A stretch of DNA of 64,000 nucleotides from Macrostomum lignano (taxonomy: Eukaryota), in the NCBI GenBank assembly GCA_002269645.1, contig NIVC01003114.1, positions 31,373 through 95,372 on the forward strand, read 5' to 3'. The notes under the pieces are model-generated. The model was not told where the DNA came from. It saw nothing but the letters and a program-made list of their open reading frames with translations, and made no database searches. Both the position numbers and the translations under genes were made by a program. Each line of letters starts with the position of its first letter. Position 1 is the first letter of the stretch. Below, piece after piece: positions 25,447-56,451 of the stretch.

Positions 25447-25449
25447 GGC

Positions 25450-25510: not shown

Positions 25511-25535
25511 GGCAGACAGACAGACAGACAGACAG
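24930..25535 (+). repeat. (GACA)n/(GTCA)n microsatellite
   Basis: Seen directly; explains ORF 24872-25756. Confidence 0.97.
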
Positions 25536-25540
25536 GCAGC

Positions 25541-29624: not shown

Positions 29625-30125
29625 TGAGTCTGTGAAGATTTGAGTTTGTGAAGATTTGAGTCTGTGAAGATTAGAGTCTGTGAAGGTTCGAGTCTGTGAA
29701 GTTTCAAGTCTGTGAAGATTTGAGTCTGAAGATTTGAGTCTGTGAAGATTTGAGTCTGAAGGTTTAAGTCTGTGAAGATTTGAGTTGTGAAGATTTGAGT
29801 CTGTTAAGATTTGAGTCTGTGAAGATTTGAGTCTGTTAAGATTCGAATCTGTGAAGATTTGAGTCTGTGAAGGTTCGAGTCTGTGAAGATTTGAGTCTGT
29901 TAAGATTCGAATCTGTGAAGGTTCGAGTCTGTGAAGGTTCGAGTCTGTGAAGTTTCAAGTCTGTGAAGGTTCGAGTCTGTGAAGGTTCGAGTCTGTGAAG
30001 TTTCAAGTCTGTGAAGGTTCGAGTCTGTGAAGGTTCGAGTCTGTGAAGTTTCAAGTCTGTGAAGATTTGAATCTGTGAAGGTTCGAGTCTGTGAAGATTC
30101 GAGTTGTGAAGATTCGAGTTTGTGA
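29625..30125 (+). repeat. 16-nt minisatellite GAGTCTGTGAAGATTT
   Basis: Seen directly. Confidence 0.95.
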
Positions 30126-30680
30126 AGGTTTCGAGATGGTGCAAGCAGCTCTCTCCTCCACATTCAGTGCAAAGCAAGGAGTTATTTTCCTATCCAGACA
30201 GTCATTTTCATAATCACAAACTCCTTGGCGAAACAGCACAGAAAAAATCAACAATAGACAGAGCAGCTCTCAAAAGTGCACCCGAATTTGCACACGGCGC
30301 CTGAGGGTCTTAAGCTGCCTAAGTCTTTTGAACGAGAGAGAAAAAATGCAGACTCAAACTGATGAAACAACTCTCTATTAAACCGTGTTGCAGTTTTGTT
30401 TATTTTACATGAACTGGTTATGCAGATGACCAGAAACTGAGCTGGGTAAAAAACAGCTAATAGCAATACTGACAAATAAATATGCTAAAATATACGTTTG
30501 ATAATTAATTTTGTTATTTTGTAACAACTTGGCAAATTAGTGAAACTTTATATTAGTAACAGGTTAAATTTATTGCAGGAAAAAATGGTATGGTCGAATT
30601 TTAAAACTGTTCCATTGTGATCAGCTAATAACATATGATTGGGTGCGATCTGCGAATGCAAAACAGAGATATGCTGCAGT

Positions 30681-32430: not shown

Positions 32431-32433
32431 TTC

Positions 32434-35400
32434 TTAAGCACTCAGCTGCAGCTGGCCCTCCCTGTCCAACTGCTCAACAAGCTGCTCCAAAGCTTCCAGC
32501 ACGCAGTCTGGCAGGTGATCTCTCAGCATGGAGGGCGACACTAACAATTCGTCGAAATCGTCTCGATCAGCCCAGACCGCGCGCCACAACAACGGCGCCG
32601 ATTTAGTAGGCCGCGCCGGCCTCACCAAATGAAGAATTCTGCCTGGCAGGTACAGCGGCGGTCGGCCAGTCTCGGCCGCGGCCGCCGCATGCCAGTCCCG
32701 ACGTAGTAGGCCTTCGACAAAGTCGTCAACTTCGATGCCATCTAAAGAATCGCTAGCTGCGCTGCTGACGCCGTTGCCGCAACATATGATGCGCCATTTC
32801 GGACGGCGCGCCCTGCCCAACAGGGAAGTCATGGTGGCCCGCATGCCGTCCAGCTGGGCGAGGCCCAGCCGACAAACGGCGTCCTTGCCGACCACCACCG
32901 AGGTGACGAATTGACGAGAAACTTCGGTTCCGGCGGCGCATAGAAGGCCGCCTGGCGGGCTGAAAGCTAGAACGCGCGGTCGACGATCGGAAGCGCGACA
33001 GGAAGCGGAACCGGAAGCGGAACCGGAAACAAAACCGGAACCGGCGGCTCGCATCCGCAATCCAAGGACTACGGCGACCCCGGCTCCGAGGCTGTGTCCA
33101 GTCAGCAGCAGAGGCAGATCCGTAGGCGTTTCCGTTAGCCAACCGGAAGACAGCAACAGTTGGTGAACTTGCTCGGCTGCTCGAGCGATGCCGCTGTGAC
33201 TGGAACAAGTGGCTTCCGGGTGCGGGCGATCAACCTTCATTTTCGAATTTATTTGAGATTCTGAACGTGTTTTGATTAGTTCTTCGCTGTAGTGCACAGT
33301 TTTTGGTCTGAAGTCTGTCGAATCTGGAGTAGATCGAACAGCTTCCGGTGTAGATTGAACAGATTCCGGTGCAGATTGAACAGCTTCCGGTGCAGATTGA
33401 ACAGCTTCCGGTGTAGATTGATTAGCTTCCGGTGTAGACTGAACAGCTTCCGGTGTAGATTGATTAGCTTCCGGTGTAGATTGAACAGCTTCCGGTGTAG
33501 ATTGATTAGCTTCCGGTGTAGATTGATTAGCTTCCGGTGTAGATTGAACAGCTTCCGGTGTAGATTGATTAGCTTCCGGTGTAGATTGATTAGCTTCCGG
33601 TGTAGATTGAACAGCTTCCGGTGTAGATTGAACAGCTTCCGGTGTAGATTGAACAGCTTCCGGTGTAGATTGAACAGCTTCCGGTGTAGACTGAACAGCT
33701 TCCGGTGTATGCACCTCCTCAGGTGGCGCCCAAATTCGTTCAGCATCGGCCCTCAAATCGGTGAGAACGTCACGCATAGACAGCGTGCCCCGGATAGCCA
33801 CAACCAGTCGGTTTCGCCGCTTATCCAAGCCGACGTAGAACGGCGTGCAGCCTGCGGCCTCAGGCAGCTCCTGGCTGACGTGCAGCAGCTGGAACGCATC
33901 AGGCCCGATGCCGCTGCGTCGGAGCAGGGCTTCCACGCTGGCGCGGGCGACGGCGCCGGGATCGTTGCGGCAACGGCGGAAGTCAAAACAGCAGCAGCAG
34001 CAGCAACCGGCGGTCTGCTTGTTGTTGCCAGGGCTGTCGTTTGGAGGGGGATACGGGGAAGGGATTACCACATAAATTTCTAAGTTAATAACAAAGACCT
34101 GTCGATCCGATAGTTGAATAATCCCTAGTTCAAGATGACATTGTCCAGGTATTAATCCCCAATTAGAGATCCCATTATCCAGGTATTGATGCCTAATTAG
34201 AGATCCCATTATCCAGGTATTAATCCCCAATTAGAGATCCCATTATCCAGGTATTAATCTTTAATTAGAGATCCCATTATCCAGGTATTAATCCCCAATT
34301 AGAGATCCCATTATCCAGGTATTAATCCCCAATTAGAGATCCCATTATCCAGGTATTAGTCCCCAATTAGAGATCCCATTATCCAGGTATTAGTCCCCAA
34401 TTAGAGATCCCATTATCCAGGTATTAATCCCTAATTACAGATCATATTATCCAGGTATTAATCCCTACTTAGAGACCCCATTATCCAGGTATTAATCCCT
34501 ACTTAGAGACCCCATTATCCAGGTATCAATCCCTAATTAGAGATCCCATTTTCCAGGTATTAGTCCCCAATTAGAGATCCCATTATCCAGGTATTAATCT
34601 TTAATTACAGATCATATTATCATCCAGGTATTAATCCCTACTTAGAGATCCCACTATTCAAGTATGAATTCAAAATTTCGATGTTCTGAAGCGACACTGA
34701 CTACTAGACTAAAATCGCCTAAAGACTATAGAGATACAAAGACTGAAGATTTATAACAAACAGATAAAATGCAAAAGTTGATTAACCTGAGCTGGCACAG
34801 CAGGCAGCAGCAATTAGTAGTGTAAGCCAGCATAGGGCAGCCATAAGCTGCCAATGCCAGCTTCATTCCGAATAACAATTCCGGTAGGAGGCTGGATGCT
34901 TCATCGCTGTCGGCGCGAAGGAACCGAGTGCTGGAAAGAATCGGCCTGCCAGACATGAAGGCCTGCACGTCGGCTGAACCGCTCTGTCGGTGTGAGAATT
35001 AATAAATTTGACTGTCAATATTAAATATTAATTGTAGTACTGTAGATAGGCAGAGTGCATTTCTAAGCCTAACCTAAACCTAACCGAAAACCCTAAACCT
35101 AACCTAAACCCTAAACCTAACCTAAACCTAACCAAAAACACTAAACCTAACCTAAACCCTGAACCTAACCGAAAACCCTAAACCTAACCTAAACCTAACC
35201 TAAACCTAACCAAAAACACTAAACCTAACCTAAACCCTAAACCTAACCTAAACCTAACCAAAAACACTAAACCTAACCTAAACCCTAAACCTAACCGAAA
35301 ACACTAAACCTAACCTAAACCCTAAACCTAACCTAAACCTAACCAAAAACACTAAACCTAACCTAAATCATAAACCTAACATAAATCCTGACCTTAACCT

Positions 35401-40488: not shown

Positions 40489-41614
40489 TGCTCAGCTAGT
40501 CAAAATCGAAGTGAATTTCGCGCACCCCTACCAGCAGCTCACGGTGTATTTTACCCAGTTCGGTTAGGTCTGCCTTTTTTGAAGCCTTAATCCAGAGCTG
40601 CATGGCCTCCGGGCTTAGGATTTACACAGGCCCTGACTGCGCGGACATGAACATTGAAGGGGGAGAAAAGCAGCCAGTCCCCTCTTCCCTTTACCCTATC
40701 TCACTTCCCCGTCCCAGCGATTGCATTCCCCCTCGCCCAACCACCCTTGATCCCCTCCCTTCCACTGCCTCGTCTCGCGCTCCCCTGCCTCCGATAGTCC
40801 CTCCGAGAGCACCAACCCCATTACATGCATACCGGCCTGAAGCCAGCAGCCAGCGCACACACGAGAGGATGGGTGAATGAACTTTGCTAGGGGGGGGGGG
40901 GATGATGTCTAATCGAGAAGCCAATTCAAGGCCAGGAAGGGGAAGAAATACAGGCAGATAGAAACAGCCCCTACCCTGATAAATATTTCCTTTCCTCGAC
41001 AAAAAAAATAAATTTACCTTTAAAGACAAATAGATGAGCCAAACTACAGAACTACAGACTACTTACAATAATATAATATAGTAGTATCAGTACTTAAGTA
41101 TCATGGACACTGGTCAGACAGTAGGCACTACTTTCTTAAATAATTAAAAACATTAAACAAGTATTTGGAGCTCTTAAAGTCACAGATTGGCTCCAGTAGA
41201 TTAATAAAATATACTACTAGATACTATACTACTTACTCTAATATTCCATTAACAGTATTTTAAAAAGTACTTTAAGCTATAATTTGACCAGGCTCCTCTT
41301 AATAACTTAAAATAAACTGGTTCTTTTAAGCATAAAAATTGCTAGGTCTAAAAAGATCTTAATTAAATAAAAAATCAAAATCTCTATAAGTCTCAGTTTA
41401 CAGATTCATCAAATTTCACAATTGATAGGAAATCTTAAATCTAAAGAATACCAATATTTATAAAATTATTAGTAATTTAAATGAAACCATTTATAAAATA
41501 TAATGACTAAACTAAACTGCATCAAGCTAAAAAAACAAGGTACCATCTATGGACATAAAAAGCAAAGGCCTATACATAAAAGGGATAAAGTACACATGGG
41601 AAAGAGAATAAAGG

Positions 41615-42915
41615 AGAGAGAGAAGAAAGGGGAGAGAGAAGAAAGGGAAGAGAGAAGAAGGGGAGAGAGAAGAAAGGGGAGAGAGAAGAAGGGGAGAAAG
41701 AAGAAAGGGGAGAGAGAAGAAGGGGAGAAAGAAGAAAGGGGAGAGAGAAGAAAGGGGAGAGAGAAGAAAGGGAAGAGAGAAGAAAGGGAAGAGAGAAGAA
41801 AGGGGAGAGAGAAGAAAGGGGAGAGAGAAGAAAGGGGAGAGAGAAGAAAGGGAAGAGAGAAGAAAGGGGAGAGAGAAGAAAGGGAAGAGAGAAGAAAGGG
41901 GAGAGAGAAGAAAGGGAAGAGAGAAGAAAGGGGAGAGAGAAGAAAGGGAAGAGAGAAGAAAGGGGAGAGAGAAGAGAGGGGAAAGAGAAGAAAGGGGAGA
42001 GAGAAGAAAGGGGAGAGAGAAGAAAGGGGAGAGAGAAGAAAGGGGAGAGGAGAGAAGAAAGGGGAGAGAGAAGAAAGGGAAGAGAGAAGAAGGGGAGAGA
42101 GAAGAAAGGGAAGAGAGAAGAAAGGGGAGAGAGAAGAAAGGAGAGAGAGAAGAAAGGGGAGAGAGAAGAAAGGGAAGAGAGAAGAAGGGGAGAGAGAAGA
42201 AAGGGGAGAGAGAAGAAAGGGAAGAGAGAAGAAGGGGAGAGAGAAGAAAGGGAAGAGAGAAGAAAGGGAAGAGAGAAGAAAGGGAAGAGAGAAGAAGGGG
42301 AGAGAGAAGAAAGGGAAGAGAGAAGAAGGGGAGAGAGAAGAAAGGGAGGAGAGAAGAAAGGGGAGAGAGAAGAAAGGGGAGAGAGAAGAAAGGGGAGAGA
42401 GAAGAAAGGAAAGAGAGAAGAAAGGGGAGAGAGAAGAAAGGGGAGAAAGAAGAAAGGAAAGAGAGAAGAAAGGAGAGAGAAAAGAAAGGGAAGAGAGAAG
42501 AAAGGGGAGAGAGAAGAAAGGGAAGAGAGAAGAAAGGGGAGAGAGAAGAAAGGGGAGAGAGAAGAAAGGGGAGAGAGAAGAAAGGGGAGAGAGAAGAAAG
42601 GGAAGAGAGAAGAAAGGGAAGAGAGAAGAAAGGGAAGAGAGAAGAAAGGGGAGAGAGAAGAAAGGGAAGAGAGAAGAAAGGGGAGAGAGAAGAAAGGGAA
42701 GAGAGAAGAAAGGGGAGAGAGAAGAAAGGGGAGAGAGAAGAAAGGGGAGAGAGAAGAAAGGGAAGAGAGAAGAAAGGGGAGAGAGAAGAAAGGGAAGAGA
42801 GAAGAAAGGGGAGAGAGAAGAAAGGGAAGAGAGAAGAAAGGGGAGAGAGAAGAAAGGGAAGAGAGAAGAAAGGGGAGAGAGAAGAAAGGGAAGAGAGAAG
42901 AAAGGGGAGAGAGGA
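41615..42915 (+). repeat. Pure-purine 16-nt minisatellite AGAGAAGAAAGGGGAG, ~1.3 kb
   Basis: No pyrimidines seen across the tract; source of three spurious 470-510 aa ORFs. Confidence 0.98.
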
Positions 42916-44434
42916 AAATAAAAAAGGCAATAAAAGTTGATAGGTATTGAGTGCCACAGATTCAGATTCAGACAATATTCAGATGTGTCCCTGCAACTAT
43001 AATAGACAGTAGTAACAGATCCCAGTATTCCATCTTTGACATTTATGCTAAGTGTTGCTAGCTGATAGTACCCCCTGGTACATTGCACACTGCAAGAAAG
43101 TTACAAGAAGTTATGGAAGATTTATTCCTCATAGCTATATAGTATATATAGATACACAACACATGGGAAATTAGGTCATAGTAAAACTCTACTTTATAGT
43201 CTATACTAGCAATCAGTGCCCCCCATTTGGGAGGCAAAAAATGCAGTACAAGTTTTTTAATAAACTGCATGTAGCATCTCATTGCAATAACCTCAGCAAT
43301 CCCTTGTTAAGCCTTGACACCATGGCAATCCCTCCCACAAGCCTTAACATATCAACTTTCCTCTTTAAAATCTTAGCCATGACCCTAATAAGCCTTGAAA
43401 TCTTGAAAAATCTGTCAAAAATTCTAACCCTAACTCTAACCCTAACCCTAAAGCATTGACATTTTAGTAATTTTTCCCAAGAGTCATTATAGCATTATGG
43501 CATTATAGCAATTCCTTCCAAGCCTTGACATTGCAGTGATTCCCAAATGAATCTCTTAACTTTGACATGACACTTCTTCTATCAGCAACCCCCTGTGAGG
43601 AGCCAAAAAAATTGTTATAAAAACTTTTGAATAAACTATATGTACTTCTGACTTTAGCCTTGACATCTCAGTTATTCCCCCATAAGCTTTGGTATCATAA
43701 TAGTTCCCCCCAAGAGTCACAACACAGTTTCACGTGACATTTTTTGACATGATGCTAATGTATCTATCAATGCTAATATAGTTATTTGTTAAATGTGTAT
43801 AATGATGATAATAGAAGGAAAAACAATTATTATATAATGTTAAGCTTGTTAGATGTATATCAAATATAAATATGATACTATTGTAGTCACCAATAGTCAC
43901 AAATCTTGACTCTTTTGAGATCTTAAAACTGAGATTAAGATTTAAAAAAGTGCTAAGATCTTGACAATTAAGATTAAGATCAAGATCTTGATTGACCCTT
44001 AAACTTTAGTATAGACCATTTTAGCAGTAATAATGCTGGCAATAGACTAAATATGATAGCTTTCATTTGTTATATATTTTTTAATACATAGAAATATATA
44101 GACAATGACAGAAAATGATTATAAATATCAAGGGTATTGTAACTTCTAGTTTCAAAGAAAGTAATTTCTAGTACTTGTTCTAGTACTAATAAAATAAAAA
44201 AGTATAAGTTAAAGTAGCTTGCAGTATTTTTGTTATTGGTTTCTATTAATTTTAAAGAACAACCAATTAAAAAGTGCTAAAACAGGTCTTTGTAGAAAAA
44301 AACAAACATGTGTTAGTCTAGAGGTAAAAAATGCTATTATTCTTCAAATAGAGATGCTACATAATATTTTTTATGGCATCCAAAATTTGAATGAATAAAA
44401 AAGCCATTTTACAAAACAAGGATTAGCAATATAT

Positions 44435-46785
44435 GTTGGCGATTTCAGTGCTGGGATACTGGTGCTGTAATTGCATTTAGCTAACAGGATAGTCACCTTT
44501 GTGCATGCTTGCGTGGGCTGTTTTTTGTGCTGGCATGTAGGGGGTAGGGGTGCACGAGATGCTGGGGCAGTTAGCCTTTTGGCGATTGGTCTTTTATGTG
44601 TGTGTGCGATGGTCTAATCAGTGCATTTGCCCTTGCATCGCTGCCAAGATGAAACCCAAGTGCCACCTGGCCTACTACGAGCTGCGTGACCTGCTCACAA
44701 GGCTCAGGTTCACCATTAATGAGAAGAAGAGTATGACGCCAATGACCAAGCTGAGGTTCCTCAGGACTGATATTGACACCGTGCAGGTGAGCCTGTCTTT
44801 CCCTCCCAACAAAGCTGAAAAACTCTAGCTTCTGCTCAACACCAGCATCTTTAAGAAGACTATCAGCAAGTCCGAGCTACAGAAGCTGCTGGGGCACCTC
44901 AGCCAAATGTGGCGCAGCATGGCCGGACATTCTTGCACCCACTGATCAAGTTTGCCAATAGCTTGTCATACCTATCTGATCGGCTCCTAGTTGCTGAAGA
45001 TCTCTAATCACAGCTGAGATGGTGGAAAAACGCCCTGAGCATGCTGCTGGCTAAGGCTGCCTGGCCTTCCCACCGGCTGGTGGCTGCTAAAAAATCCAAT
45101 TCCTGTGAAGCAGGCGGAGGCACTGTGTTGCACTTTGGCAACAGAGGCTTGACTTGGCTCTACTTTGACTGGCAGATTGACTGCAACAGCACTTTTAACA
45201 AGCTCCACATCTATGGCACCTGCTACATGCTGACCAGCTTGCTTGCCTCTGCTTGTGTGAGTCCTGCCGCTGCCTCCTATTTCCTTTTTTAGGTCTGCCT
45301 CCTGTGGTCCCAGTTCCCAGCCTCACTGCGCTTGCCCGCCAACTGCTTGGCCAAGGCTTCGCCAGCTCAACTCGCTTTGCCTACACTAGCCAATATGCAT
45401 CCTGGCACTGATTCTACGCTGCCCATGACATTTGACTGCTTGCAGCCTGGCCTGCCAATGTTTGCAACTACCTGGCTGAGCTGGCCAGCAACCGGCTATG
45501 CTCTGTCAGCAGCCTGGCATGCTATATTGCCGTTGTGTCCTGGTTGTATAAGGCAAACAGTCTGCCAACCCAACCAGGCAACCACTGGTCTAGCTTGCCA
45601 TGTGCGGAGCCTACCAACTCCTAGGGACCACCCCAAAGGCCAAACAAGCTCTGTTCCTAGCCAACCAACATTATCTATACAGTGTGCTATGGCTAGGCAA
45701 GCCCCACGACTGCACGTTCTAGTATGCCTGCATTGTTGGCTAGTGGGCCATGTTGCGGAAAGCCAACCTGTAGGTCTCTGACTGGTTTGATCCGCGGAGA
45801 GACCTCTGCATGAGCTATATCCAACCATCCCATGGCGGTGCCACCCTTGTCATCCCGAGGTTGAAAACAAACCAGTTCAGATTGCACCAGCACCGCATCT
45901 TTTTGCTGCAACTCCCAGCCGGCAACCTGCTCTGCCTAGTTGCAGCACTCCAGAAGCAGCTATTGCTCAACTGACCACAAGCTGCCCAGCATCATCTCTT
46001 CAGCATTTCCTTAAGACAAGGAGTCAGACCACTCAAGCTGTGGGTCTTTGCTAAGGCCTTGTGTGCTGCCCTGCATTGAGGCAGCTTTGCCGACCCATCT
46101 AGCTTTTCTAGGCACTCATTGCATTGAGGGGGCATGATGTCTGCAGCCAATGCTGGCATCCCTATCAACTCGGTCATGAGAGTTGGCAACTAGGCCAGCA
46201 GCGTAGTAGAGCAGTACCTGCCACTACCTGTTACTGAGCGCCATGCGCCACTCTGCCTTGCGGCGATGCTCTTGTTCCCTGGCTCCATCTTTGACTCTTG
46301 ACTCTCCTACATTAGGGTTTTGGGCTTGCTTTGCCTTGCCCTTTGTTGTCCTTGCCATCCCCGCACCTTCCGCCTTTGTCCTATTGGCTAAGTTAGCAAT
46401 TTTAGTGCTGGGGTACTAGCACTGTAATCACATTTAGCTGACAATATGGTTGCCTTTGTGCGTGCGTGCATGGGCTGTTATTTGTGCTGGCATGTGGGGA
46501 GTGGGGGTGTGCGGGATGCTAGGGCGGTTAGCCTTTTGGCGGTTAGCCTTTTAAGTGTGTGCACAGTGGTCTGATCAGTGCATTTGCCCTTGCAATTATT
46601 TTTTCTGCTTTTCCTAGCTTTTTCTTTTATCCTATGATTTTGGTTCTCCTCTTATTTTATTTAGCAATTTTGTTTCTTTTAAGCTTAAATACTATCGAAA
46701 TATACTTTTAATTGCTAGCAGGCTCACTTTGCCTGCCCTTTGTTGTCCTTGCCATCTCCACGCCTTCTACCTTTGTCCTGTTGGA
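44435..46785 (+). mobile_element. Decayed, internally deleted Ngaro/PAT-type tyrosine-recombinase retrotransposon with split direct repeats A1-[RT/RH/YR relic]-B1-A2-B2
   Basis: A1 ~44435-44627 matches A2 ~46392-46584; B1 ~46325-46388 matches B2 ~46722-46783. RT thumb relic YYELRDLLTRLRFTINEKKS...LRFLRTDIDT; YR C-terminal relic SRHSLH*GGMMSAANAGIPINSVMRVGN*ASSVVEQYL. Confidence 0.85.
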
Positions 46786-47884
46786 TAATAAGATGGTACA
46801 GTTGCGATTAGTAGAAAAAAGTTTGGAGGCTGATTTTCAAGTGTTGATTCTAACTTTAGAAATATATAAAAAGATAATTTTTGTCCAATGGCAATAGTTG
46901 TGTAACAATAAGAAGAATAGGGGGAAGGCTACTTCAGCTGACTTTTAGTTTGTATAGGTCATTTTCATTGTCCTACTAGTGTGTTATAGTTTTATAGCAG
47001 CTATACTTTATAGTAGTATAATACTTTTGTATTGTTGACTCACTTAGAATCAATGATAATCTTCTTGCAGCCTTGGAAATACTAGTTAACAATTAAGAAA
47101 ATAGATATCAACATAACAAATGGTTGCAATTTGAAAGATGGACCAGTGTACAAGACTAAATAACTTGGTTAATGCTTTTGCATTGCAATTAGAATATTAT
47201 AATTGGCCTCAAGAGTTAAAAATCAAAATACACTTAACATATATCACTAATATCATTCATTCTACATAAATATTAAAATGAAAAAATTAGCTTTTGTTTC
47301 AAAAAAATTTCTACAAATTGCACATGAGCATCATACTATATTACTATAATAGGCCTACTAGTGATCTTTGTTAGAAAACTTGCAAGGAATTGATAAACAA
47401 GAATGTTTATTGTTTTGAATGTATTAATAGTTTTAACATTAGTTGTGTCTTGCATTAAACCTGGCATAAACTAATACACAATCCAAACTATGGCCTGGGT
47501 TGTATACTTCTGCTATTAGTTTAAAAAAGAGATTCAATGCAAACATCTTTGTCTAGGCCTATGACAACTTTACTTGAATAAAGTAATTTAAAACTAAAGA
47601 AAGAATTGGTTCTTTAAAAAACTATGCTTTCTTAATGGTTTTGCATGAGTAATTTGTTGTTCCTTGCTTATTGGACACCCAAAAGAGGGGCACTAGATTG
47701 TTAGTCTATTACTAAAACTGCTAAAGTGCTAGAACTTTGCGCAACACTAATAAATATAAGTATTAAGTTAAAAGAATATTTGGCTTCTATATAGGCCTAT
47801 GCAAAATTGAAATATATCAATGCATTTTAAATATATTTATTGATGATAAAAGAGATTATTTTAATTCATTTAGATAGGCCTAGA

Positions 47885-48679
47885 GGCTCATTCCATATTT
47901 AAGCATGGTCGTAACATGACAGGTTATTTTTACTTATAAAATGAAATCTAATAATAGAATATACTAAACCAATATTTTAAATGAAAGATTATTTTGTCTA
48001 GAATATATTTATAGAGTTTCATATAGATATCATCATTAGTATAGATGCTATTAAACCTTAAATGACACTTATGGTCGTAACGACAGGATTTTTGACATAT
48101 AGAAACTAAAAGGTAAAAGTCTTATAACATTTTTCATTTTTTATATTTTGCAATACATTTTTAAAATTTGACTAAGAACATCTTTAGAAATCATACTCTT
48201 TTATTAGAATATATAAACTCAAAAGGCAACAAAGATACAAAAGAAAAGGCAGCCTTATGGTCGTAACATTATGGTCGTAACATATTTTTTTCTGTCAATT
48301 CAGTAACTTTGAGGTACTAATACATTAAAAATATAATAGATTATTTGGTCACCAATGCTTTTATCTGATGATGCAAGTACTATACTTTTATCTATAGTTT
48401 GTTTCAACCTTCAAAAGCTTTCTATTTGTTTTTAAAAGGTACAAAATCTTAATGATGTCTTTTGCTTCGAAAAATGTCCAAATTCTTACAAAAATGACTT
48501 TTTGCCAATGGCAATTGATAACATACTAATCCAACATTTTACCATTCCTTTATTCTTAGATTGTATATATTGCACAATATAAACATTTGGTAAAAAAAAT
48601 AGGCTAATTAGGCAATGGCAAGCAAAAATATTGACTTTTTTCTATTTTCCAAATATGTCCATCTTATATGGAATGAGCC
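47885..48679. mobile_element. Non-autonomous DNA transposon (MITE), ~795 bp
   Basis: TIR GGCTCATTCCATAT (47885-47898) and its reverse complement (48666-48679); TAGA on both flanks (47881-47884, 48680-48683); internal repeated motif ATGGTCGTAAC. Confidence 0.8.
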
Positions 48680-49259
48680 TAGAACGTTTTGTTATTGTTA
48701 TCAAATAGAAATTAGTTTATTTTTAGGGACTCTCAATAATTAATTTTTAAAGTTATTCCTTTAGCATTTTTTGATTGATAAATCTTAAATCTCATATGCC
48801 TAAATGAAAACAGATTAATTTTGAAAATTTATCAAGAGATAAAAGTTATAAAACTTTTTTTCAATTTAACATTTCTTGAAAAGCTGTTAAAAATTGAAAA
48901 TTTCATTTTATTGGCTTTGCATTGTATGACTTTAAGTCAAGCCTAGCCCTAGAACTTAGGCCCCCTACCATTATTTTAATTTTTTTAAATATAGATAAAA
49001 GCCTCTACTCTAATTTTTATCTTTCCTTCTATTGCATAATTATATTACTATTTGTCAATAATAAAAATAGATAAAATGTGATGTCACTAAAATGGTTGCT
49101 GCAGAGATGGTCTACCTATTGCCAAAATTGACTTTTATCCTAATTTTTATTTTTAATAGAATAATAGATCTTATATTATAGCACATCTGAAATCGCGGCC
49201 TTTTTTACTATTTCTAGGAAAGTGCATGCATTGTCGAAGTTAAAAACTAAAAAAAACGA

Positions 49260-52200
49260 CAGCTAGTAAAGTAAAAGATAGTAGGCGTGTAAAGCGGGTG
49301 GCTTTAATTGCTTTTAATTTTTGAGCGATCTGCCTCGCTGTCTTGCACCTTCTATCGTTCCGAACCATTTTCTCACATCGCTGTACTTCTCCTTGCCCTT
49401 TGTACAAAAAATCCACGGAGTGCGCGCGTACAGACCAAGGACCACTAGGAACACTTCGTTACAGTCCAGTAGTCCCCGTGCGCACCATGGGGTTTTATAT
49501 ACGTCGCTCACCTCAGCGAGAGAGGCCGTGTCACTGCTGCTCTAAAATTGCATTGCATGCATTTTGCATGCCCGGAATGAATCAGCTACTATCGAGGCGA
49601 CAAAAGAGGAGAGTAATCCTGACAATGCAAGAGGACACCAGCGCTTCAAACGGCTAAAATTTTCAAGCACGAGTTGACCAGCTAGAGACGGCTGCTAGCG
49701 GAGGTTCATCAACGGAGCAGATCGACACCAACAGGACGGGGGTCAATGCAGCGGCTATAGACCTGGTGTCGAGGAGATTCGGTCTGCGGCAGGAGCGCAT
49801 CCGCCTGTTTCAGCTGAGGCAGCTGAGAAAGCTGCGCTACATGAACGTTCTGAGCCCAAAGTCCCGTCCAGCCGCAACGTATAGTAGCTGTAGCCAGCTG
49901 GGAATACATGACCTGGATGAGTGGCAATCGATTCTTAACACTTCGCTGTCGCACGACGCAGGGGAAAGTGCAAAGGTACGGGACCCCCAGCCATCTAAAA
50001 CCCTGTTAGTCACCGACTTTCTCAGCAAAGAAGGCACGGTGGTGCACGCCAGGCACCTGCTAGCTTTAGACAGCGTCAGCGACACTCGCTCCCAAAAGCC
50101 TAAGGCTTCGCAGTATCTAGCAAACAGACCCATCAGCAACAATATCAACGTCAACAAACGCTTCCGCAGAGCCAGCCATTTCCAACATACTGTATCTGCC
50201 GAATCTTCAAAGGCAACCATCCGGCCTGGGCGCACGAGTCGGGTGCAGAAGCTCGGTGACGGTCACCTGGCTGGCCCAGCCTCCAATTTTTAGTCTTTTA
50301 AATCCTCAAGCCATGTCCGAAGTCGCGCTTTCCTGCTCCGGGCTGCACAACGAGTTATCTGTTTAGATGGAAAACAAGTCGGACAAGTTCTTTTCAGTCG
50401 GATCCCGACGCCGAGTTCAACTTGAATGACATCAGAAGAGGTTTCTAAATCACCAACCAGAGCAACATTCTCGCATCTAGCGAAGAAAACCACAGATCTG
50501 CCACTTGTCCTGAGAACCGTGAGCAAGTTGAGAAGCTGATCCTGGAGGAGCTGAAGAACAGCAGATACATGCTAGTGAAGGATAATCAGCCCCCTGAGAG
50601 TGGTGGCCAAGTCCTCTGGTGGCCTCCGGCTGATCCACACGACTCCAGTCTGCTTCGGGGCCGGAGCATCAATGAGTACTTTAAGCAGAATAAGAAGCTT
50701 CGCTTTTCGACTGTCAACGCGTTTACCAAGAAGCTGAAGCCGGGCTGGTTTATGGCTAAAATCGATCTGGCCAAAGCTTACCGCTCCTGCCCCGTCAGCT
50801 CTACAGACTACTCCATCACAGGCCTCCGGTGGATCTTTAGCAGCGAGAGTGATCCCAGGTACCTCGTCGACACCTGCCTCGACTTAGGGTTTGCTGCTAG
50901 CGTCAACATCGTCAACCGGTTGTAGGAAGTCGTAAAGCGTACGATGGTTCGGCGAGGGCACCACGTCATCTGCAACTACCTCGATGACTTTGCCGTTGCC
51001 GCGAGCACGCTGGAAGCCTGCCAGGAAGCTTATCGCACTCTTATGAGTCTGCTACGCCGCCTGATTTTTTTTCCATCAACTGGGAGAAGCTATATCCACC
51101 CAGCAAGTCCATGGTCTTTCTCGGCATCCACATCAATACGGCTGCAGGCCGTCTGACTCTCCCGCAGGAAAAGACCTCGCAGCGTATCTGCCAGGTCGCG
51201 CGCACTGGTAGATCGTTACTTCAGGGCCTCATCAACCGGACCAACAGCCTGGACTCGCCTCACCACAAGATGCGCATCGAAGGTCAACTTGGTGAGCAGC
51301 TGCATTGCTGGCGATCAGCGATGAACTGGACGCATTGACTGCGGCCGGCCTTCGCGAACCGGCTGGTGGTTGCGACGCTTGCCTAACAGGTGGCGCCGCT
51401 GTCATTTCTGACGGAACCAAGACCGACTGGATGCATGTCAACTGGTTGGTTGACTTTTATGGTGCTTTGCACGGACTACATCAGCTACACTAATATACCT
51501 GGAGTGTTTGATGACTATGCTTTTTATTATACTTTTCAAGGAGCACCTAGCTAAATGCCACGTCGTTTTTGCACCAACAACTCGTCTGTTGCTGGGATGC
51601 TGCGCAAGGGCTATGCCAAGCCCCCGATGGTTCGAGAGCTGATGTGCACAGCTATTTTACTCGCACTGAAGCACCGCATTCACGTCGATGCGTTTCATGT
51701 CCCAGCTGGCCTGTTTCAAATTTTTAGTGACCCAGCTTCTCGCCTGAGCCATTTAGCATAAACTAATTAACATTTTATTTCGTTACTATGGCACTGTCTA
51801 TAGCTCGTATTGACCCATCTGTTATAGCATCGCACGCCCTGTCTGCTGCTTCCTGTCAATCTCAACTACTCTCAGCTGCTCAACTAAGCTCTGGCACCGA
51901 ATACGAGACGAGCCCTCAGATCCCAGCTGTTGGGATCTTCTGCAGCGAGATCAGCGTGCACCCTCTAGAGGCCGACAGACGGCGATGTCACTCTACGTCT
52001 CCCACCTACACCTCAAGCAACTGGCTGCATTCGCCAGCTTCTCCGCCTACCTGCAGGCGGTGTCGTGGCTCTACAAGCTGGCTGGGAGGACTGGCCCGAC
52101 TGTCGACCATGCGAGACAGAAAATCGGATTGACTCACACCATGCTGCGGCAGCTCAGGTCACACATCGACACAACATTCTGCCGTGGCGCGGCCTTCTGG

Positions 52201-52410
52201 TGCTGTCTGCTGGTCGGTTTCTGGGGCTTGCTGGATGGCGGACATCTGTGCCTCCCTTCTGTGTCAGCCGCCCAGAGCCCGCAGTTGTCATCCGGAGCGG
52301 TGCGGCTGAATCCAGTTCAGTTTGAGACCATCCAGTTCGCTGAGTGTCAGCACAAGGTCTGGCTGCCGCGATTTCCCGCTGCGAATGGGTCTCCACATCC
52401 GCTTTTGCCC
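49260..52410 (+). mobile_element. Younger, defective Ngaro/DIRS-type retrotransposon (gag-like, RT, RNase H, 5' part of YR)
   Basis: MAKIDLAKAYRSCPV, YLVDTCLDLGFAASVNIVNRL, CNYLDDF, HVDAFHVP...SDPASRL, YR-like AAFWCCLLVGFWGLL; several stops and frameshifts; the 5' end is approximate. Confidence 0.85.
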
Positions 52411-54402
52411 ATCGGAATATACCGCGCTCTGTTGGACACCCGCGTGAAGCGTCAATTCGCGGGCGCTTTCATCGGCGCGCTTGGAGACCAGCGCGAGGCG
52501 GAGTATTCCGACATCAGCACCGCCGTTAGAGCCGCTGCAGAGCAGACAATCCCGCTGGTGCGGCCAGCGCAAAAATCGCTGCCTGTCTGGCAGAGCGACC
52601 CGACCATCCAGGCAAGCGCGGCTCAACATCGAGCGACTCCACAGAAACCGGCGGCCCACAGGCGACGCTGAAGACGCGTTTGAGCGCCTTCTAGACGAGC
52701 GGCAACAGGCCGCTGTCGACGACGCCGTCCGGTCCATCACTGCAGCCGGCCCCGACGTGAAGAGCCGGGCAGTGTGGACGGCCGTGGTGCTGAATCTGGC
52801 TGGCGACACCCCGGCGACACCTCGGAGGAGCGCAGGAATGAACTGCGCGACTTCTTCGCCGGCATCGTGAACGCGCCCGCGTCGCCGCTGCCCGCCAGCT
52901 TTGCGCTCCCACTGGACACGCCGCTCCCAGCTGAGGAGGAATTCTGCACCAGACCAGTCATCACGGAGGACGATGTGCTGTTCGCTCGGAAAACATCAGG
53001 CGGCAAGGCGCTCGGCACAGACGAGGTCCCGGTCGAAGCGCTGCGGCTCCGCTGTGTGGCCTCCCAGGTCGCAGGCGTGTCATGAACCGCGTGCTCGCCG
53101 GTGCTCCTGCGCCCACCGATTGGACCGTCGCGCCGATCCCGAAGAAGGCAGGGACAACGCGGAAAGAAGACCACCGCAGGATCTCGCTGATGTCCTGCAC
53201 CGCGAAGCTCTTCAACCGGCTGCTGCTCCATCGTCTGTAGTCGGTGCTGGATCCGTACCTGCGGTACGAGCAGAACGAATTCCGGCCGCAATGCGGTACA
53301 GTGACACAGATCCTCGCACTCCGCCGTGTCATCGAGGAGGCGCACATCCGCCAGTCTACGCTGATCATTGTCTTCGTTGACTTTCGAAAGGCGTTTGACT
53401 CGGTGTTGAGAGCCGCGCTTCCCTTTGTTCTTCGAGCCTACCGTGTACCCCAGCAGCTAATCGACGCTGTCATGGCGCTGTATCGCGACACTCGAGCTGC
53501 TGTGGTGACAACGGACGGCCTGTCTGGCGTGTTCGACACTTCATCAGGAGTTCTGCTGGGCGACACGCTGGCGCCGTTTCTCTTCGTGCTGCTGCTGTAC
53601 TGCGTGCTTCGGACCGCTCTCCTATCGGCTGACGACGGCTTCCTGCTGTGCAAGATGCATCGGTTGCCGCCACGGCGAAAAGCGCCTGAGCGTGCTTGGC
53701 TACGCCGACGACCTCGCCCTTCTGTCCTCGCCCGTTGAAGGCGCCCAGCGCGAGATCGACAGGTTGGTCGAGGTAATATCGAGCGTCGGACTGGTTGTCA
53801 ACACGCTGAAGACTGAGGTGCTGACTGTGCCGGCCGACATCCCAGCGGACCTGACATGCCGCGGCGCAGACGGGCAGACGACCAAGCTCGCACGCTGCCA
53901 GCGGTTCACCTACCTCGGCGGTCTGGTTCCTGACGTGGAGAAAGACCTTCGGCGGCGCAGAGGACTTGCCTGGGCGGCCTTCCGTTCGATCCGGGCCGTC
54001 GTCCAGTCCGAAGCGCTGCCCAACCGCCAGAGGGTTCGGCTGTGGCAGGCGGTTGTCGAAACCGTCCTGCTATACAACGCCGAGACGTGGACGCTGACGG
54101 CTACGCTAGAGCGGCAGCTGGACTCGGCGCACTCAGGGCTGCTTCGTGCGGCCTTTCGAGCTGACGAGAGCGTCGGGACCGAGGCCCTGTACGATCGGGC
54201 CAAGCTGCAGCGCCCGTCCATCATCCTGCGCTGGCGGCGACTTCAACCGGGCCCCGTGATCCGGGCCGAGGGCTACTGCCTCCAACCTGTTTAGGACGTC
54301 CTGCTGCTCACCCTGCAGGGCCCGTTCAGGTGGGGTCAGGCCCGAACCATCTGACGCACCCTGCTCTGTGACTTTGCTGCGTATTTCGTTGTTGTTGTTG
54401 TT
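52410..54402 (+). mobile_element. 5'-truncated non-LTR retrotransposon, RTE-like, frameshifted
   Basis: RT motifs EQNEFRP, VFVDFRKAFDSV, GVLLGDTLAPFLFVLLL, LGYADDL, FTYLGG, VETVLLYNAETWTLT; (GTT)n 3' tail at ~54388-54402. Confidence 0.9.
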
Positions 54403-54514
54403 TATTCTTTTGAAAGGCACAGCATATCAAAAGATGAACATTGGTTCTGCCTACTATCGAAAGCATTGACAACTTTTGTGCTGAAAAATGAAAACTTCCT
54501 ATCTGTGTAGTGTA

Positions 54515-54879
54515 GGGGGCCGTAGCCCAGCGGTAGCGCAGCTGCTCTGGTGTGCCAGCGACCCAGGCTCAATTCCAAGTGCAGTCACATTAATTTGGGG
54601 CGGAATTGGAATCTCGGCTTGGCTCTGCTCGTGCAATTAACGGCCTTGAGAGCCAACCCCCCAAGGCGCAGTGAAGTATACATGCCTAACGATAAAATAA
54701 AGTTAGGGCCGCTGTACACTCCTGAGTGAGTGTGTGCCTGCGCACGTATCCACGCGCTTGTATGCCTGCTCAGGGGAGTCGGCGGAATGGGCAGCAATGC
54801 CTCTCGCCAGTTGTGTGCCTATGTCGCTTAAAGTGCGCCAGGGTGCACACAACCCCCCTCCCCTGCCTCTAATAAAAAA
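54515..54879 (+). mobile_element. tRNA-derived SINE family 2, full length with target-site duplication
   Basis: Head GGGGGCCGTAGCCCAGCGGTAG, A-rich tail, 14-bp TSD ATCTGTGTAGTGTA (54501-54514 and 54880-54893); close copy at 58980-59320. Confidence 0.92.
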
Positions 54880-55555
54880 ATCTGTGTAGTGTATTTTTCG
54901 GCGAAAATCAGCCTCACAAACATTTTCCTAGAAACTTAGTTTCCCTTCCTTCTAATCAGTATTGTAGTCCTTGGCATAAACACATGCAAGTACATGTATG
55001 ATTACATGCAGTTAGAGTTTGTACCAGACAATGCGAGGTAAAGTTCACTCACTTGGACTCAACTTAACTAGCTGGAGCCATGGTCATCTTTGCTGCTCTC
55101 TGATTTACATGTACTTGCAAATTCGTTTATTGAGCATCTAATTGTCCCCTAACTATCAGATTTTTTATCAACGGGCGCCTTTATAAAAGACGGTTGGTGT
55201 CGACATCTGATCTCGATACATGTAAATAATTTATACAGTTATCAACGACCAAATAGAACAGAAGTACAAGACAGATCTTATTCAAAATCACGTACGCGTG
55301 GATCGAACATTTGACCTTAAATGTTAGATTTTTTATTATTATAGTATCATTTTAAGAGTACGTACACTGTACACACACACTGTCATAGTGTTCCTTCGTG
55401 ACCTTTAAATCTTAAATTCATGCCCATAAATATGCATATACTGTATACTATAGCTATACATATTTATTGAGCAAATCGTAAAAAATCGATTATAGATGTG
55501 TCTATTCAGCGAAAACCTCAATTATTAGCAGAACAGTAGTATTTATAGCTAAATT

Positions 55556-56451
55556 CTATCGCAGATGCGTTGGAAACTGACTGTCAAACTCGGGATGAAG
55601 CAACGGTCCCCGGATATAGATAGCCAGGTAGGTAAAGCAGTAGAGAGTCACCATGGCGAATGCGATGCCTGGCAGCAGGAATAGAATCCCCAGCGGCAGT
55701 TCTCGCTCCAGTAGTCTCTCTGGCAGCGTCCATGCAGAGGTGGGTGCGTGCATAGGCCTCTATAACAGTGGACTACCAAGGTGGAGATCCCCGCCCTGGC
55801 CATTTTTTCTGCACCGGAACGGAGCAACGCAGGCAACGAAATTCAAGTTGCCTGCTGACATCACTCGATAAAGAAGTCGAAAGCGTCTGGATGACGACTA
55901 AATTCTTGAGAGACTGGGTCAAATAGTCACCTGATGCCACTTATTGAAGGCCCAGAAGCTCCGCCTGGGTGAAGGCCAGAAGGCCAGCAGGCGAATGCAG
56001 GCACATGCGTTCGATGTGCTGATGAAATTTGGAGGCTTGGCAAAGCTGCACTAATGCACTATAGCGTTTATGGGAAAAAGCCCGACCTTCTGGCAGAATC
56101 GTTGAATATCTCGACAGTCCAGAGAGCCGGCGACCTGATTCTTACTTGAGAATTGTTGCGCAACAAAAGGTTGGCCCGTGTTCTTGAATTTCGTGTGCCT
56201 GGGTTGCTCTGCTATCCCCTCCCCGGTAGTTCCCCTCCCGGGAAGAAAATGGTATCCCTATACTGTTAGTAAACTTTCGCGTTCAGAACAGTATATAAGG
56301 ATTACAACTTACGCATTTCTTTAATAATTTTGGCATCTTCGGTTTTGCACGAATTCGCCTCGGCGATGGCTGAGTCAAGTAAGGTGACGAACATTAACAG
56401 AGTGATTGTCAGAACCGGGCCTTTGGCTGGCAGACTCCATTCAGCGGCCAT
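55556..56451 (-). CDS. Unresolved small gene: signal-peptide exon plus downstream exon(s) that are transmembrane or Cys-rich
   Basis: Exon 56451-56313 (MAAEWSLPAKGPVLTITLLMFVTLLDSAIAEANSC..., donor GTAAGT); candidate exon ~56211-56146 (donor GTAAGA); hydrophobic ORF 55753-55556. I could not build one consistent model. Confidence 0.35.

What the first reader, a model, noticed from the sequence alone, without database searches (positions are those of the whole stretch)
41000..49180. Sharply bounded ~8 kb block with RIP-like C>T hypermutation at CpG and CpA
Seen: CG is nearly absent over long stretches (e.g. 41040-41600, 42900-43700, 46870-47700, 48700-49180) and TA/TAG/CTA is conspicuous, while similarly AT-rich DNA elsewhere in the window (14460-14900, 55000-55550) keeps normal CG. 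By-eye alignment of the two ~190-nt A repeats of the retro-relic (44435-44627 vs 46392-46584) gives about 36 mismatches: ~15 at ancestral CpG (CG/CA, or TG in one copy and CA in the other, e.g. ggTGctgtaatTGc vs agCActgtaatCAc), ~10 TG/TA or CA/TA, ~7 other transitions, only ~4 transversions. The YR relic is killed by CGA>TGA and TGG>TAG. Established: CpG decay follows 5mC deamination; CpA>TpA on duplicated DNA is the hallmark of fungal RIP (RID methyltransferase-like protein) and is not described for animals as far as I know. Inference: a transposon-targeted methylation/deamination system acting on CpG and CpA may operate on discrete domains of this genome.
Basis: partly seen in the sequence, partly recalled or inferred. 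Interest (0 to 1): 0.88.

Follow-up and report, generated by a model that had tools for sequence, protein, structure and literature searches.

The report
Flatworm repeat island with local C-to-T hypermutation
An 8-kb island of dead repeat DNA in the flatworm Macrostomum lignano has lost almost all its CpGs and keeps gaining C-to-T changes about ten times faster than its neighbours, which looks like the footprint of local DNA methylation rather than fungal-style RIP.

Summary
With tandem repeats masked, window 40999-49193 has CpG o/e 0.26 against 0.93 elsewhere, and both edges are sharp. The window is Macrostomum lignano (NIVC01003114.1). Two further contigs carry the same block in the same syntenic place, so it is neither a chimera nor a contaminant.

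Window-versus-homeolog comparison gives a direct rate test:
- Flanks (21,159 sites): transitions 1.1%, ts/tv 1.4, CpG changed 3%.
- Retroelement relic (44435-46790): transitions 10.8%, ts/tv 5.2. Changed: CpG 66%, CpA 16.5%, CpT 8.9%, CpC 8.4%.
- CAG/CTG is twice as mutable as other non-CpG cytosines.

The process is strand-symmetric, equal in both lineages, evenly spaced, and polarised C>T. It spreads into adjacent AT-rich DNA and stops at the compositional edge.

It is not RIP. CpG dominates over CpA, the RIP indices are negative, and the equally duplicated flanks are spared. The dependence on the +1/+2 base (CG >> CWG > CHH) points to methyltransferase targeting, not APOBEC-type editing. 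M. lignano retains DNMT1 and DNMT3.

Best reading: a discretely methylated repeat island decaying by 5mC deamination, possibly with a non-CG component. This rests on one locus, with no methylation data.

The parts
40999..41597 (.). Left AT-rich, CpG-free edge of the block (26% GC, 0 CG). It is shared with the homeolog up to 41368.
   Evidence: The alignment across the boundary shows the compositional switch at the same base in L002 and L003. Non-CpG C sites here are at baseline (2/95 changed).
41598..42913 (+). 16-nt GA-only satellite (GGGAGAGAGAAGAAAG), 82.6 copies. The homeolog has about 20 copies.
   Evidence: TRF; homeolog alignments.
42914..44223 (.). AT-rich segment with 1 CG, absent from the homeologous contigs (an insertion here or a deletion there). 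It contains a short CTAACC telomere-like run and degenerate repeats of about 58 bp.
44224..44434 (.). AT-rich DNA just upstream of the retroelement, shared with the homeolog and hypermutated (6 of 51 non-CpG C sites changed).
44435..44627 (+). Direct repeat A1 of the DIRS/Ngaro-type element.
   Evidence: 82% identical to A2; 32 ts, 4 tv; four-copy comparison.
44649..45205 (+). Relic of the reverse transcriptase C-terminus and RNase H. It has two frames, lineage-specific stops at 44826 (TAG, CAG in the homeolog) and 45005 (TAA, CAA in the homeolog), and a 288-bp deletion at 45205 relative to the homeolog.
   Evidence: The homeolog copy gives Pfam RT_RNaseH at E=0.007, below threshold.
45313..46253 (+). 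Relic of a Cre-like tyrosine recombinase ORF. It has one frameshift near 45618. Stops include 45409 and 45433 (TGA), 45591 (TAG, window only), and 45720, 45741 and 45771 (TAG). The HSLR>HSLH* box lies at 46113.
   Evidence: The homeolog copy matches the N-terminal domain of Cre recombinase at E=8e-7 and Pfam Phage_int_SAM_1 at E=0.011-0.025. The window copy itself gave no database hit.
46337..46391 (+). Direct repeat B1, directly abutting A2.
   Evidence: 87% identical to B2.
46392..46584 (+). Direct repeat A2.
46734..46788 (+). Direct repeat B2, separated from A2 by a 149-bp AT-rich spacer that is also present in the homeolog.
46791..47877 (.). AT-rich DNA to the right of the element, shared with the homeolog and hypermutated at non-CpG C sites (41/295 = 13.9%; CpG 3/5).
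47878..48702 (.). 826-bp segment absent from the homeolog. It has repeats of about 172 bp with four TTATGGTCGTAACA motifs, which hold most of the residual CpGs of the right arm.
48703..49193 (.). Right AT-rich, CpG-free edge. Non-CpG change is intermediate (7/116). The compositional switch falls at the same base in the homeolog.

Best explanation
The block is a discrete island of old repeat DNA in the Macrostomum lignano genome. It consists of AT-rich CpG-free DNA, a GA satellite, and a 5'-truncated, dead DIRS/Ngaro-type retrotransposon that encodes a tyrosine recombinase.

Shown: since the homeologous copies separated, cytosines inside the island have mutated to thymine far faster than in the flanks. 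The changes occur on both strands, in both lineages, and at independent sites. The context hierarchy is CG >> CAG/CTG > other CH. CpG mutability collapses at the compositional edge.

Inferred: the island is cytosine-methylated in the germ line or stem cells by the DNMT1/DNMT3 enzymes this flatworm retains. Methylation would be dense at CG and lower at CWG/CH, and spontaneous 5mC deamination would convert it to T. This erodes CpG first and drives the sequence towards AT-richness.

The consequence resembles RIP, because the element is riddled with stops after only about 2-3% neutral divergence. The mechanism is not homology-triggered RIP. How the island is chosen is not shown; piRNA guidance or heterochromatin spreading are possibilities.
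For: Identity and reality of the block:
- The window is M. lignano NIVC01003114.1.
- The same block lies in the same synteny on NIVC01000150.1 (L002 and L005) and NIVC01003332.1 (L003).
- Both edges fall at the same bases in the homeolog, and the homeolog block has CpG o/e 0.24 against 0.94 in its flank.

Rate test:
- Relic, n=2258: ts 10.8%, tv 2.1%, CpG 116/176 changed, CpA 70/424, CpT 33/369, CpC 24/287.
- Adjacent AT-rich DNA: CpA 14.7%, CpT 9.4%, CpC 10.1%.
- Flanks, n=21159: ts 1.1%, tv 0.8%, CpG 3.2%, CpA 1.8%, CpT 1.6%, CpC 2.0%.
- CWG 61/318 against other CH 120/1224 (p=1e-5); in the flank both are 1.8%.
- A G at position -1 is disfavoured in every context.
- The CpG-changed fraction drops from 55-69% to 9% across 49194.

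Nature of the process:
- Strand symmetry: 21.0% against 20.5% changed. Lineage symmetry: 87 against 83 events.
- Poisson spacing.
- Direction is C>T. Lineage-specific CAG>TAG and CAA>TAA stops, plus TGG>TAG in one copy and TGG>TGA in the other. In the four-copy A/B comparison I hand-sorted the events: about 18 non-CpG C>T, about 4-5 T>C, and 5 tv. The polarised flank baseline is 10: 7: 14.

Literature: M. lignano keeps DNMT1 and DNMT3 and has low-level 5mC (PMC11292947, PMC9246332, PMC10658182, all citing Wasik et al. 2015).
Against: - No methylation data were available for this locus, and the primary paper (Wasik 2015) could not be read.
- This is one locus and one homeolog pair.
- Transversions are also 2.5-fold higher in the block. 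Normalised to transversions, the non-CpG excess shrinks to about 3.6x (CpA), 2.2x (CpT) and 1.6x (CpC).
- The left AT-rich edge (40999-41368) shows no non-CpG excess (2/95).
- Another retroelement relic in the window (51788-54294) is not affected, so 'TE-targeted' is not a general rule.
- A CpA rate equal to about 17% of the CpG rate would need unusually high non-CG methylation for an animal germ line.
Confidence: 0.58

Rival explanations
1. Only CpG is methylated. The non-CpG C>T excess is then a by-product of the island being heterochromatic and unconstrained: a higher general mutation rate, poorer repair, or less gene conversion between homeologs. There would be no non-CG methylation.
For: Transversions are 2.5-fold higher in the block than in the flanks, and divergence varies along the flanks (tv 0.3-1.6%). 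The CpC excess is only about 1.6x after normalising to transversions. The left AT-rich edge is at baseline.
Against: - Non-CpG ts/tv is 2.7 in the relic against 0.86 in the flanks.
- The polarised data show a C>T-specific rise, with no matching rise in T>C.
- The excess depends on the +1 and +2 bases (CAG/CTG 19% against 9.8%, p=1e-5), and that dependence is absent in the flanks.
Confidence: 0.22
2. An active enzymatic C>T genome defence marks repeats. This could be true RIP-like mutation by a DNMT-like or RID-like enzyme, or an AID/APOBEC-type deaminase.
For: The element was inactivated quickly: 13% divergence against about 2% in the flanks. TGG>TAG and CAG>TAG stops recur. CpA exceeds the other non-CpG contexts. 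There is marginal strand clustering of non-CpG events (combined P=0.044).
Against: - CpG dominates over CpA, and the RIP indices are negative.
- The duplicated flanks are spared.
- There is no strand asymmetry, event counts are equal in both lineages, and spacing is Poisson.
- Specificity sits at +1/+2 rather than at -1/-2. The -1 preference is A~C>T>G, which fits neither TC, CC nor WRC.
Confidence: 0.08
3. Artefact or inherited composition. The block would be a misassembled or contaminant piece, or a horizontally acquired AT-rich, CpG-poor element with no ongoing process. The apparent hypermutation would then come from comparing paralogous TE copies, or from gene conversion with diverged family members.
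For: The assembly is PacBio-based and repeat-rich. L003 looks like a mosaic relative to L002. Two segments (42914-44223 and 47878-48702) are copy-specific.
Against: - Three contigs share the block, with identical junctions to unique flanks on both sides.
- Alignments run continuously from the flank through the AT-rich DNA into the element.
- Differences are evenly spread rather than in tracts.
- ts/tv of 5-7 and 66% CpG turnover cannot come from paralogy alone.
Confidence: 0.04

Closest known systems
CpG decay of methylated DNA by 5mC deamination (vertebrate transposons; low-CpG compartments in mosaically methylated invertebrate genomes)
   Same: Low CpG o/e with TpG/CpA excess, strand symmetry, a clock-like and independent-site character, CpG transitions far above all other changes, and sharp domain edges.
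   Different: The low-CpG compartment here is a repeat island, not gene bodies; three gene exons in the window have CpG o/e of 0.85-1.07. Non-CpG cytosines are also elevated, with a CAG/CTG preference. The organism is a flatworm whose genomic methylation pattern a 2022 review describes as unknown (PMC9246332).
Plant transposon methylation in CG, CHG and CHH contexts, with elevated C>T at methylated cytosines
   Same: The mutability ranking CG > CHG (CAG 24%, CTG 14%, CCG 21%) > CHH (about 9.5%) mirrors the plant context hierarchy, and it is confined to repeat DNA.
   Different: Animals lack chromomethylases as far as I know (from memory). No methylation data exist here, and the resemblance is inferred from substitutions only.
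Fungal repeat-induced point mutation (RIP; RID-dependent, Neurospora crassa), and the CpG+CpA variants reported in Aspergillus (from memory)
   Same: C>T transitions that kill a transposon and drive it towards AT-richness. CpA>TpA nonsense mutations occur. The result is a sharply bounded AT-rich block next to GC-normal DNA.
   Different: CpG is preferred, not CpA. There is no CpA/TpG depletion. The process is not triggered by duplication, because the duplicated flanks are spared. It is not bursty or strand-coordinated. The host is an animal.
APOBEC3G/AID-type cytidine deaminase hypermutation
   Same: Recurrent TGG>TAG (GG>AG) changes in a retroelement.
   Different: There is no plus-strand bias. 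The changes arose in situ after integration, because syntenic copies differ. Specificity is set by the base 3' of the C, not 5' of it.
DIRS-order retrotransposons of the Ngaro/PAT type (for the element itself)
   Same: Split direct repeats in the order A1 ... B1-A2 ... B2, and RT/RNase H followed by a Cre-like tyrosine recombinase.
   Different: The gag region and most of RT are missing. There is a 149-bp spacer between A2 and B2. The element is dead, with at least 9 stops, frameshifts and a 288-bp deletion.

Membership tests
Fungal RIP | Mutation is triggered by sequence duplication: any duplicated segment of a few hundred bp is hit and unique DNA is spared | tested here: not met
   The flanks exist in 2-3 copies at 97-99% identity over more than 10 kb, yet show ts 1.1% and CpG change 3.2%. 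The local A1/A2 duplicates are no more mutated than the single-copy interior of the element (12% against 14%).
Fungal RIP | CpA>TpA preference with substrate depletion: (CpA+TpG)/(ApC+GpT) below about 1.03 and raised TpA/ApT | tested here: not met
   The substrate index is 1.33-1.86 in three of the four block parts, and TpA/ApT is 0.88-0.99, the same as in the AT-rich controls. Only the 598-bp left edge has RIP-like values (0.87 and 1.30). Per-site mutability is CpG 66% against CpA 16.5%.
Fungal RIP | Processive, strand-coordinated bursts of C>T | tested here: inconclusive
   The runs test against a composition-aware null gives a combined P of 0.044. Events per 50 bp have variance about equal to the mean. 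Both lineages carry equal loads.
Fungal RIP | RID/Masc1-type DNMT-like enzyme in the genome | not testable with these tools
5mC-deamination decay of a methylated domain | CpG depletion with TpG/CpA excess relative to the flanks | tested here: met
   CpG o/e is 0.26 against 0.93. In the relic, CA o/e is 1.40 and TG o/e is 1.52.
5mC-deamination decay of a methylated domain | Orthologous comparison shows CpG transitions greatly elevated inside the domain, on both strands, stopping at the domain edge | tested here: met
   116/176 against 88/2723 CpG sites changed. The plus strand is 0.69 and the minus strand 0.67. The fraction falls from 55-69% to 9% across 49194.
5mC-deamination decay of a methylated domain | 5-methylcytosine actually present on the domain in germ-line cells | not testable with these tools
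   No methylome data are accessible. Reviews state only that M. lignano has low-level 5mC (PMC11292947, PMC10658182).
5mC-deamination decay of a methylated domain | DNMT1 and DNMT3 present in the organism | not tested
   Taken from the literature (PMC11292947, PMC9246332) and not verified here.
AID/APOBEC editing | Specificity set by the -1/-2 bases (TC, CC, WRC), with strand-biased clusters | tested here: not met
   The dominant dependence is on +1 (G >> A > T ~ C) and +2 (G). The -1 order is A~C>T>G. Strands are equal.
DIRS-order (Ngaro/PAT-type) retrotransposon | Encodes a tyrosine recombinase instead of an integrase | tested here: met
   The homeolog copy of the ORF matches Cre recombinase at E=8e-7, query residues 14-116. 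The window copy is its syntenic counterpart at 87% nucleotide identity. The window copy alone gives no hit.
DIRS-order (Ngaro/PAT-type) retrotransposon | Split direct repeats A1 ... B1A2B2 | tested here: met
   A1 is 44435-44627, B1 46337-46391, A2 46392-46584 and B2 46734-46788. The arrangement is conserved in the homeolog. A 149-bp spacer between A2 and B2 is atypical.
DIRS-order (Ngaro/PAT-type) retrotransposon | Reverse transcriptase and RNase H upstream of the recombinase | tested here: inconclusive
   Only RT_RNaseH at E=0.007, below the Pfam cut-off, on the homeolog copy. The motifs are recognisable by eye.

The most novel reading that the evidence does not exclude
Macrostomum lignano may run an animal genome defence that mutates repeat islands at cytosines in all contexts. 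This would work either through plant-like CG/CHG/CHH methylation by its DNMTs or through DNMT- or deaminase-catalysed C>T conversion. Gene bodies and duplicated unique DNA would be left untouched. Such a system would be a functional analogue of RIP that inactivates a retrotransposon within about 2-3% of neutral divergence.
Probability: 0.25. Interest if true: 0.8.

Novelty: new variant of a known kind. Interest (0 to 1): 0.6.

Why it matters
A 2022 review describes the genomic pattern of DNA methylation in free-living flatworms as unknown (PMC9246332). Most invertebrates methylate gene bodies rather than transposons.

This locus gives a sequence-only footprint, calibrated internally by the homeolog. 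It suggests that in M. lignano methylation is confined to discrete repeat islands, that it is strongly mutagenic, and that it may extend to CAG/CTG. The three gene exons in the window show no CpG loss.

If this holds genome-wide, the recent genome duplication of this species becomes a natural experiment for measuring context-specific, methylation-driven mutation in an animal. It would also show that TE inactivation by C>T decay can be as fast in an animal as RIP is in fungi, without homology sensing.

Tried and rejected
Searches that found nothing:
- A word-indexed homolog search with the stitched window recombinase relic gave no hit at E<=1e-3.
- Pfam and PDB searches on the window relic gave nothing.
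- An exhaustive HMMER search with the longest stop-free 66-aa piece gave 0 hits.
- The recombinase identity was finally obtained only from the less-decayed homeolog copy.
- Rfam and tRNA scans of the block found nothing.
- The primary M. lignano genome paper (PMC4603488) is not held. The Macpiwi paper does not mention methylation.

Readings rejected:
- Contaminant or chimera, for example diatom food DNA. Three contigs share the block and its junctions.
- APOBEC editing of cDNA before integration. The differences are between syntenic copies and are strand-symmetric.
- ADAR-type A>G editing, because UAG is the preferred ADAR triplet. Polarisation by outgroup copies and by in-frame stops shows G>A, not A>G.
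- Dcm-like CCWGG targeting. The TGG sites are not in that context.

Corrections made along the way:
- A first flank estimate had an inflated CpC class from tandem repeats. I fixed this by masking the TRF intervals.
- A first estimate for 40999-41600 was contaminated by misalignment beyond 41368.

Full report
**1. The observation**

The CpG desert is real and sharply bounded. No CG occurs between 40997 and 43733. From 46806 to 49193 there are nine CGs, and CG density jumps to the expected level at 49194. With all TRF arrays masked, the block 40999-49193 holds 57 CG against 218 expected (o/e 0.26). The rest of the window has o/e 0.93, and every 500-bp bin below 0.45 lies inside the block.

Two parts of the observation are weaker than stated:
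- TpA and TAG/CTA are only mildly enriched, and no more so than in the AT-rich controls.
- The classical RIP indices are not RIP-like. (CpA+TpG)/(ApC+GpT) is 1.33-1.86, except in the 598-bp left edge.

In the A/B repeat pairs alone, CpA is not significantly more mutable than CpT+CpC once site numbers are counted (p=0.20).

**2. What the DNA is**

A calpain exon at 59448-60143 is 100% identical to a Macrostomum lignano protein. The window maps to NIVC01003114.1:31373-95372 of assembly GCA_002269645.1.

The block is a composite, from left to right:
- AT-rich CpG-free DNA.
- A 16-nt GA satellite.
- A 1.3-kb copy-specific AT-rich segment.
- A 2.35-kb dead retroelement.
- 2.4 kb of AT-rich DNA, which includes an 826-bp copy-specific segment.

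The retroelement has the split direct repeats A1 ... B1-A2 ... B2. It carries an RT-C-terminus/RNase H relic followed by a recombinase relic. The window copy gave no database match at all. The less decayed homeologous copy matches the N-terminal domain of Cre recombinase at E=8e-7. It also gives sub-threshold Pfam hits to RT_RNaseH and Phage_int_SAM_1 in the expected order. The 'YR retro-relic, Ngaro-like' label is therefore supported.

**3. Homeologous copies: the key evidence**

I used a diacylglycerol-lipase gene on the left and a 100-aa gene on the right as handles. With these I fetched the syntenic region from two other contigs:
- NIVC01000150.1, as loci L002 and L005, which overlap and together span window 22000-64000.
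- NIVC01003332.1 (L003) and NIVC01004409.1 (L006).

These contigs are colinear with the window and contain the block. Both compositional edges fall at the same bases. The homeolog block is equally CpG-poor, at o/e 0.24 against 0.94 in its flank. This excludes a chimeric join or a contaminant. It also shows that the island and the dead element, which shares stops at 45409, 45433, 45720 and 45741, predate the separation of the copies.

**4. Rate test**

I compared the window with its homeolog, with tandem repeats masked, using only gap-free pentamers.

| Region | Sites | ts | tv | ts/tv | CpG changed | CpA | CpT | CpC |
|---|---|---|---|---|---|---|---|---|
| Flanks | 21,159 | 1.1% | 0.8% | 1.36 | 3.2% | 1.8% | 1.6% | 2.0% |
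| Retroelement 44435-46790 | 2,258 | 10.8% | 2.1% | 5.2 | 65.9% (116/176) | 16.5% (70/424) | 8.9% | 8.4% |
| Adjacent AT-rich DNA (44224-44434, 46791-49193) | 1,619 | 3.6% | 1.7% | 2.07 | 4/6 | 14.7% | 9.4% | 10.1% |

The raw excess in the relic is about 20-fold for CpG, or about 33-fold after a simple saturation correction. It is 9-fold for CpA and 4-5.5-fold for CpT and CpC.

Transversions are also 2.5-fold higher, so I normalised to them by hand from the counts. The conservative excess is then about 13x (CpG), 3.6x (CpA), 2.2x (CpT) and 1.6x (CpC).

Context effects inside the block:
- CpA exceeds CpT+CpC in the relic (OR 2.1, p=1.5e-4). The flanks show no such difference (OR 1.0).
- CAG/CTG sites change twice as often as other CH sites (61/318 against 120/1224, p=1e-5). 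In the flanks both are 1.8%.
- A G at -1 is disfavoured in every context.

Assigning TG-versus-CA double mismatches to CpG makes the CpA count conservative. Multi-hit paths through an ancestral CpG still need one true non-CpG hit to produce TpA.

**5. Character of the process**

- It is strand-symmetric: 21.0% against 20.5% of C sites changed.
- It is equal in the two lineages: 87 against 83 events.
- It is evenly spread along the element, with variance about equal to the mean per 50 bp.
- Strand clustering is only marginal against a composition-aware null (P=0.044).

The direction is C>T. The evidence is:
- Lineage-specific stops are CAG>TAG (44826, 45591) and CAA>TAA (45005).
- One Trp codon became TAG in one copy and TGA in the other.
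- In the four-copy A/B comparison I hand-sorted the events. About 18 are non-CpG C>T, about 4-5 are T>C, and 5 are transversions.
- A polarised flank baseline gives 10: 7: 14 for the same three classes.

Spatially, non-CpG change is 10-14.5% from 44.2 to 47.8 kb. It falls to about 6% at 48.4-49.0 kb and about 4% just outside, then to 1-2% further out. CpG change falls abruptly, from 55-69% to 9%, at 49194.

The left AT-rich edge (40999-41368) is at baseline for non-CpG sites (2/95). The non-CpG effect is therefore centred on the element and its right arm, not uniform over the 8 kb.

**6. Interpretation**

Dependence on the base 3' of the cytosine (G >> A > T ~ C), and on a G at +2, is what DNA methyltransferase target contexts look like: CG, then CWG. 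APOBEC/AID enzymes instead read the 5' bases.

Reviews state that M. lignano, unlike planarians and parasitic flatworms, retains DNMT1 and DNMT3 and has low-level 5mC. They also state that the genomic pattern is unknown for any free-living flatworm (PMC11292947, PMC9246332, PMC10658182).

The simplest account is a discretely methylated repeat island that decays by 5mC deamination. Methylation would be dense at CG and weaker at CWG/CH. From memory, mammalian DNMT3 non-CG methylation favours CAG/CAC with an A at -1. That fits, but it is a recalled resemblance and not a test.

The three gene exons in the window have CpG o/e of 0.85-1.07. A second, GC-rich retroelement relic (51788-54294) has o/e 1.07 and only 5.8% CpG change. 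The mark is therefore neither gene-body methylation nor a blanket over all TE relics. How this island is chosen remains open.

**7. Why it is not RIP**

- The context order is CpG-first.
- There is no CpA/TpG depletion.
- The flanks are just as duplicated as the element and are spared.
- The local A1/A2 duplication confers no extra load.
- There are no bursts.

The outcome does resemble RIP. The element differs by about 13% from its homeolog, while the flanks differ by about 2%. A1 and A2 differ by 19%. Much of the element's apparent age therefore comes from C>T hypermutation.

**8. Limits**

This is one locus and one homeolog pair, with no methylation data and no access to the proteome or to other copies of the family. 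Divergence between homeologs is heterogeneous along the flanks (tv 0.3-1.6%). Part of the non-CpG excess could therefore reflect a general heterochromatin effect. Because of that, the non-CG methylation component is held at moderate confidence.

Noticed in passing
window 47878-48702: This 826-bp segment is absent from the homeolog. It is built of degenerate repeats of about 172 bp, with four copies of TTATGGTCGTAACA (0.24 expected by chance). These motifs carry most of the residual CpGs of the right arm. CpG o/e is about 0.6 here against about 0.05 around it (rough hand estimates, not from a call), as expected for a younger insertion that has decayed for less time.
   Followed up: partly
window 42914-44223: This 1.3-kb AT-rich segment has a single CG and is absent from both homeologous contigs. 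It contains a CTAACC telomere-like run (43423-43451) and degenerate 'AGCCTTGACA' repeats of about 58 bp. Whether it is an insertion here or a deletion there is unresolved.
   Followed up: partly
window 41598-42913: The GA-only 16-mer satellite has 82.6 copies in the window but only about 20 in the homeolog, so the array size changed quickly inside the island.
   Followed up: no
window 51788-54294: This GC-rich (63%) frameshifted relic resembles a reverse transcriptase (RVT_1 E=0.002). It keeps a full CpG complement (o/e 1.07) and shows only 5.8% CpG change against the homeolog. A dead retroelement that is evidently not in the hypermutated class.
   Followed up: partly
window 1-40400: About 40 separate mini- and microsatellite arrays (units of 4 and 14-36 nt) fill roughly a third to half of the sequence. 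They share a strand bias: C-rich on the + strand, with negative GC skew throughout.
   Followed up: no
window 32434-34230 (minus strand): A single 598-aa ORF encodes a diacylglycerol-lipase-like protein (Lipase_3). It contains a 21-nt (7-aa) tandem repeat of 18 copies at 33329-33709 inside the coding sequence. The homeolog protein is 94% identical.
   Followed up: no
L002 691-978 (homeolog of window 45205): The homeolog retains a 288-bp RNase H-coding piece (with ...TDN... and ...ADLLSR motifs) that is deleted in the window copy.
   Followed up: yes
L003 versus L002, window 22000-32433 equivalents: L003 is about 100% identical to L002 next to the block. It is much closer to the window than L002 is further left (ts 0.3% against 1.3%). 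This suggests recombinant haplotypes, gene conversion between homeologs, or an assembly mosaic.
   Followed up: no
window 49194-64000 versus L005: Transversion divergence between homeologs falls from 1.0-1.6% (49-54 kb) to 0.3-0.5% (54-64 kb, the calpain gene region). This could be constraint or recent homogenisation, and it matters for any clock-like use of these copies.
   Followed up: no
window 50890-64000 (window, L006, L005): In the polarised flank baseline, 10 of 41 events are CpG C>T. Unmethylated-looking flank DNA therefore still shows a mild, roughly 3-fold per-site CpG effect.
   Followed up: no
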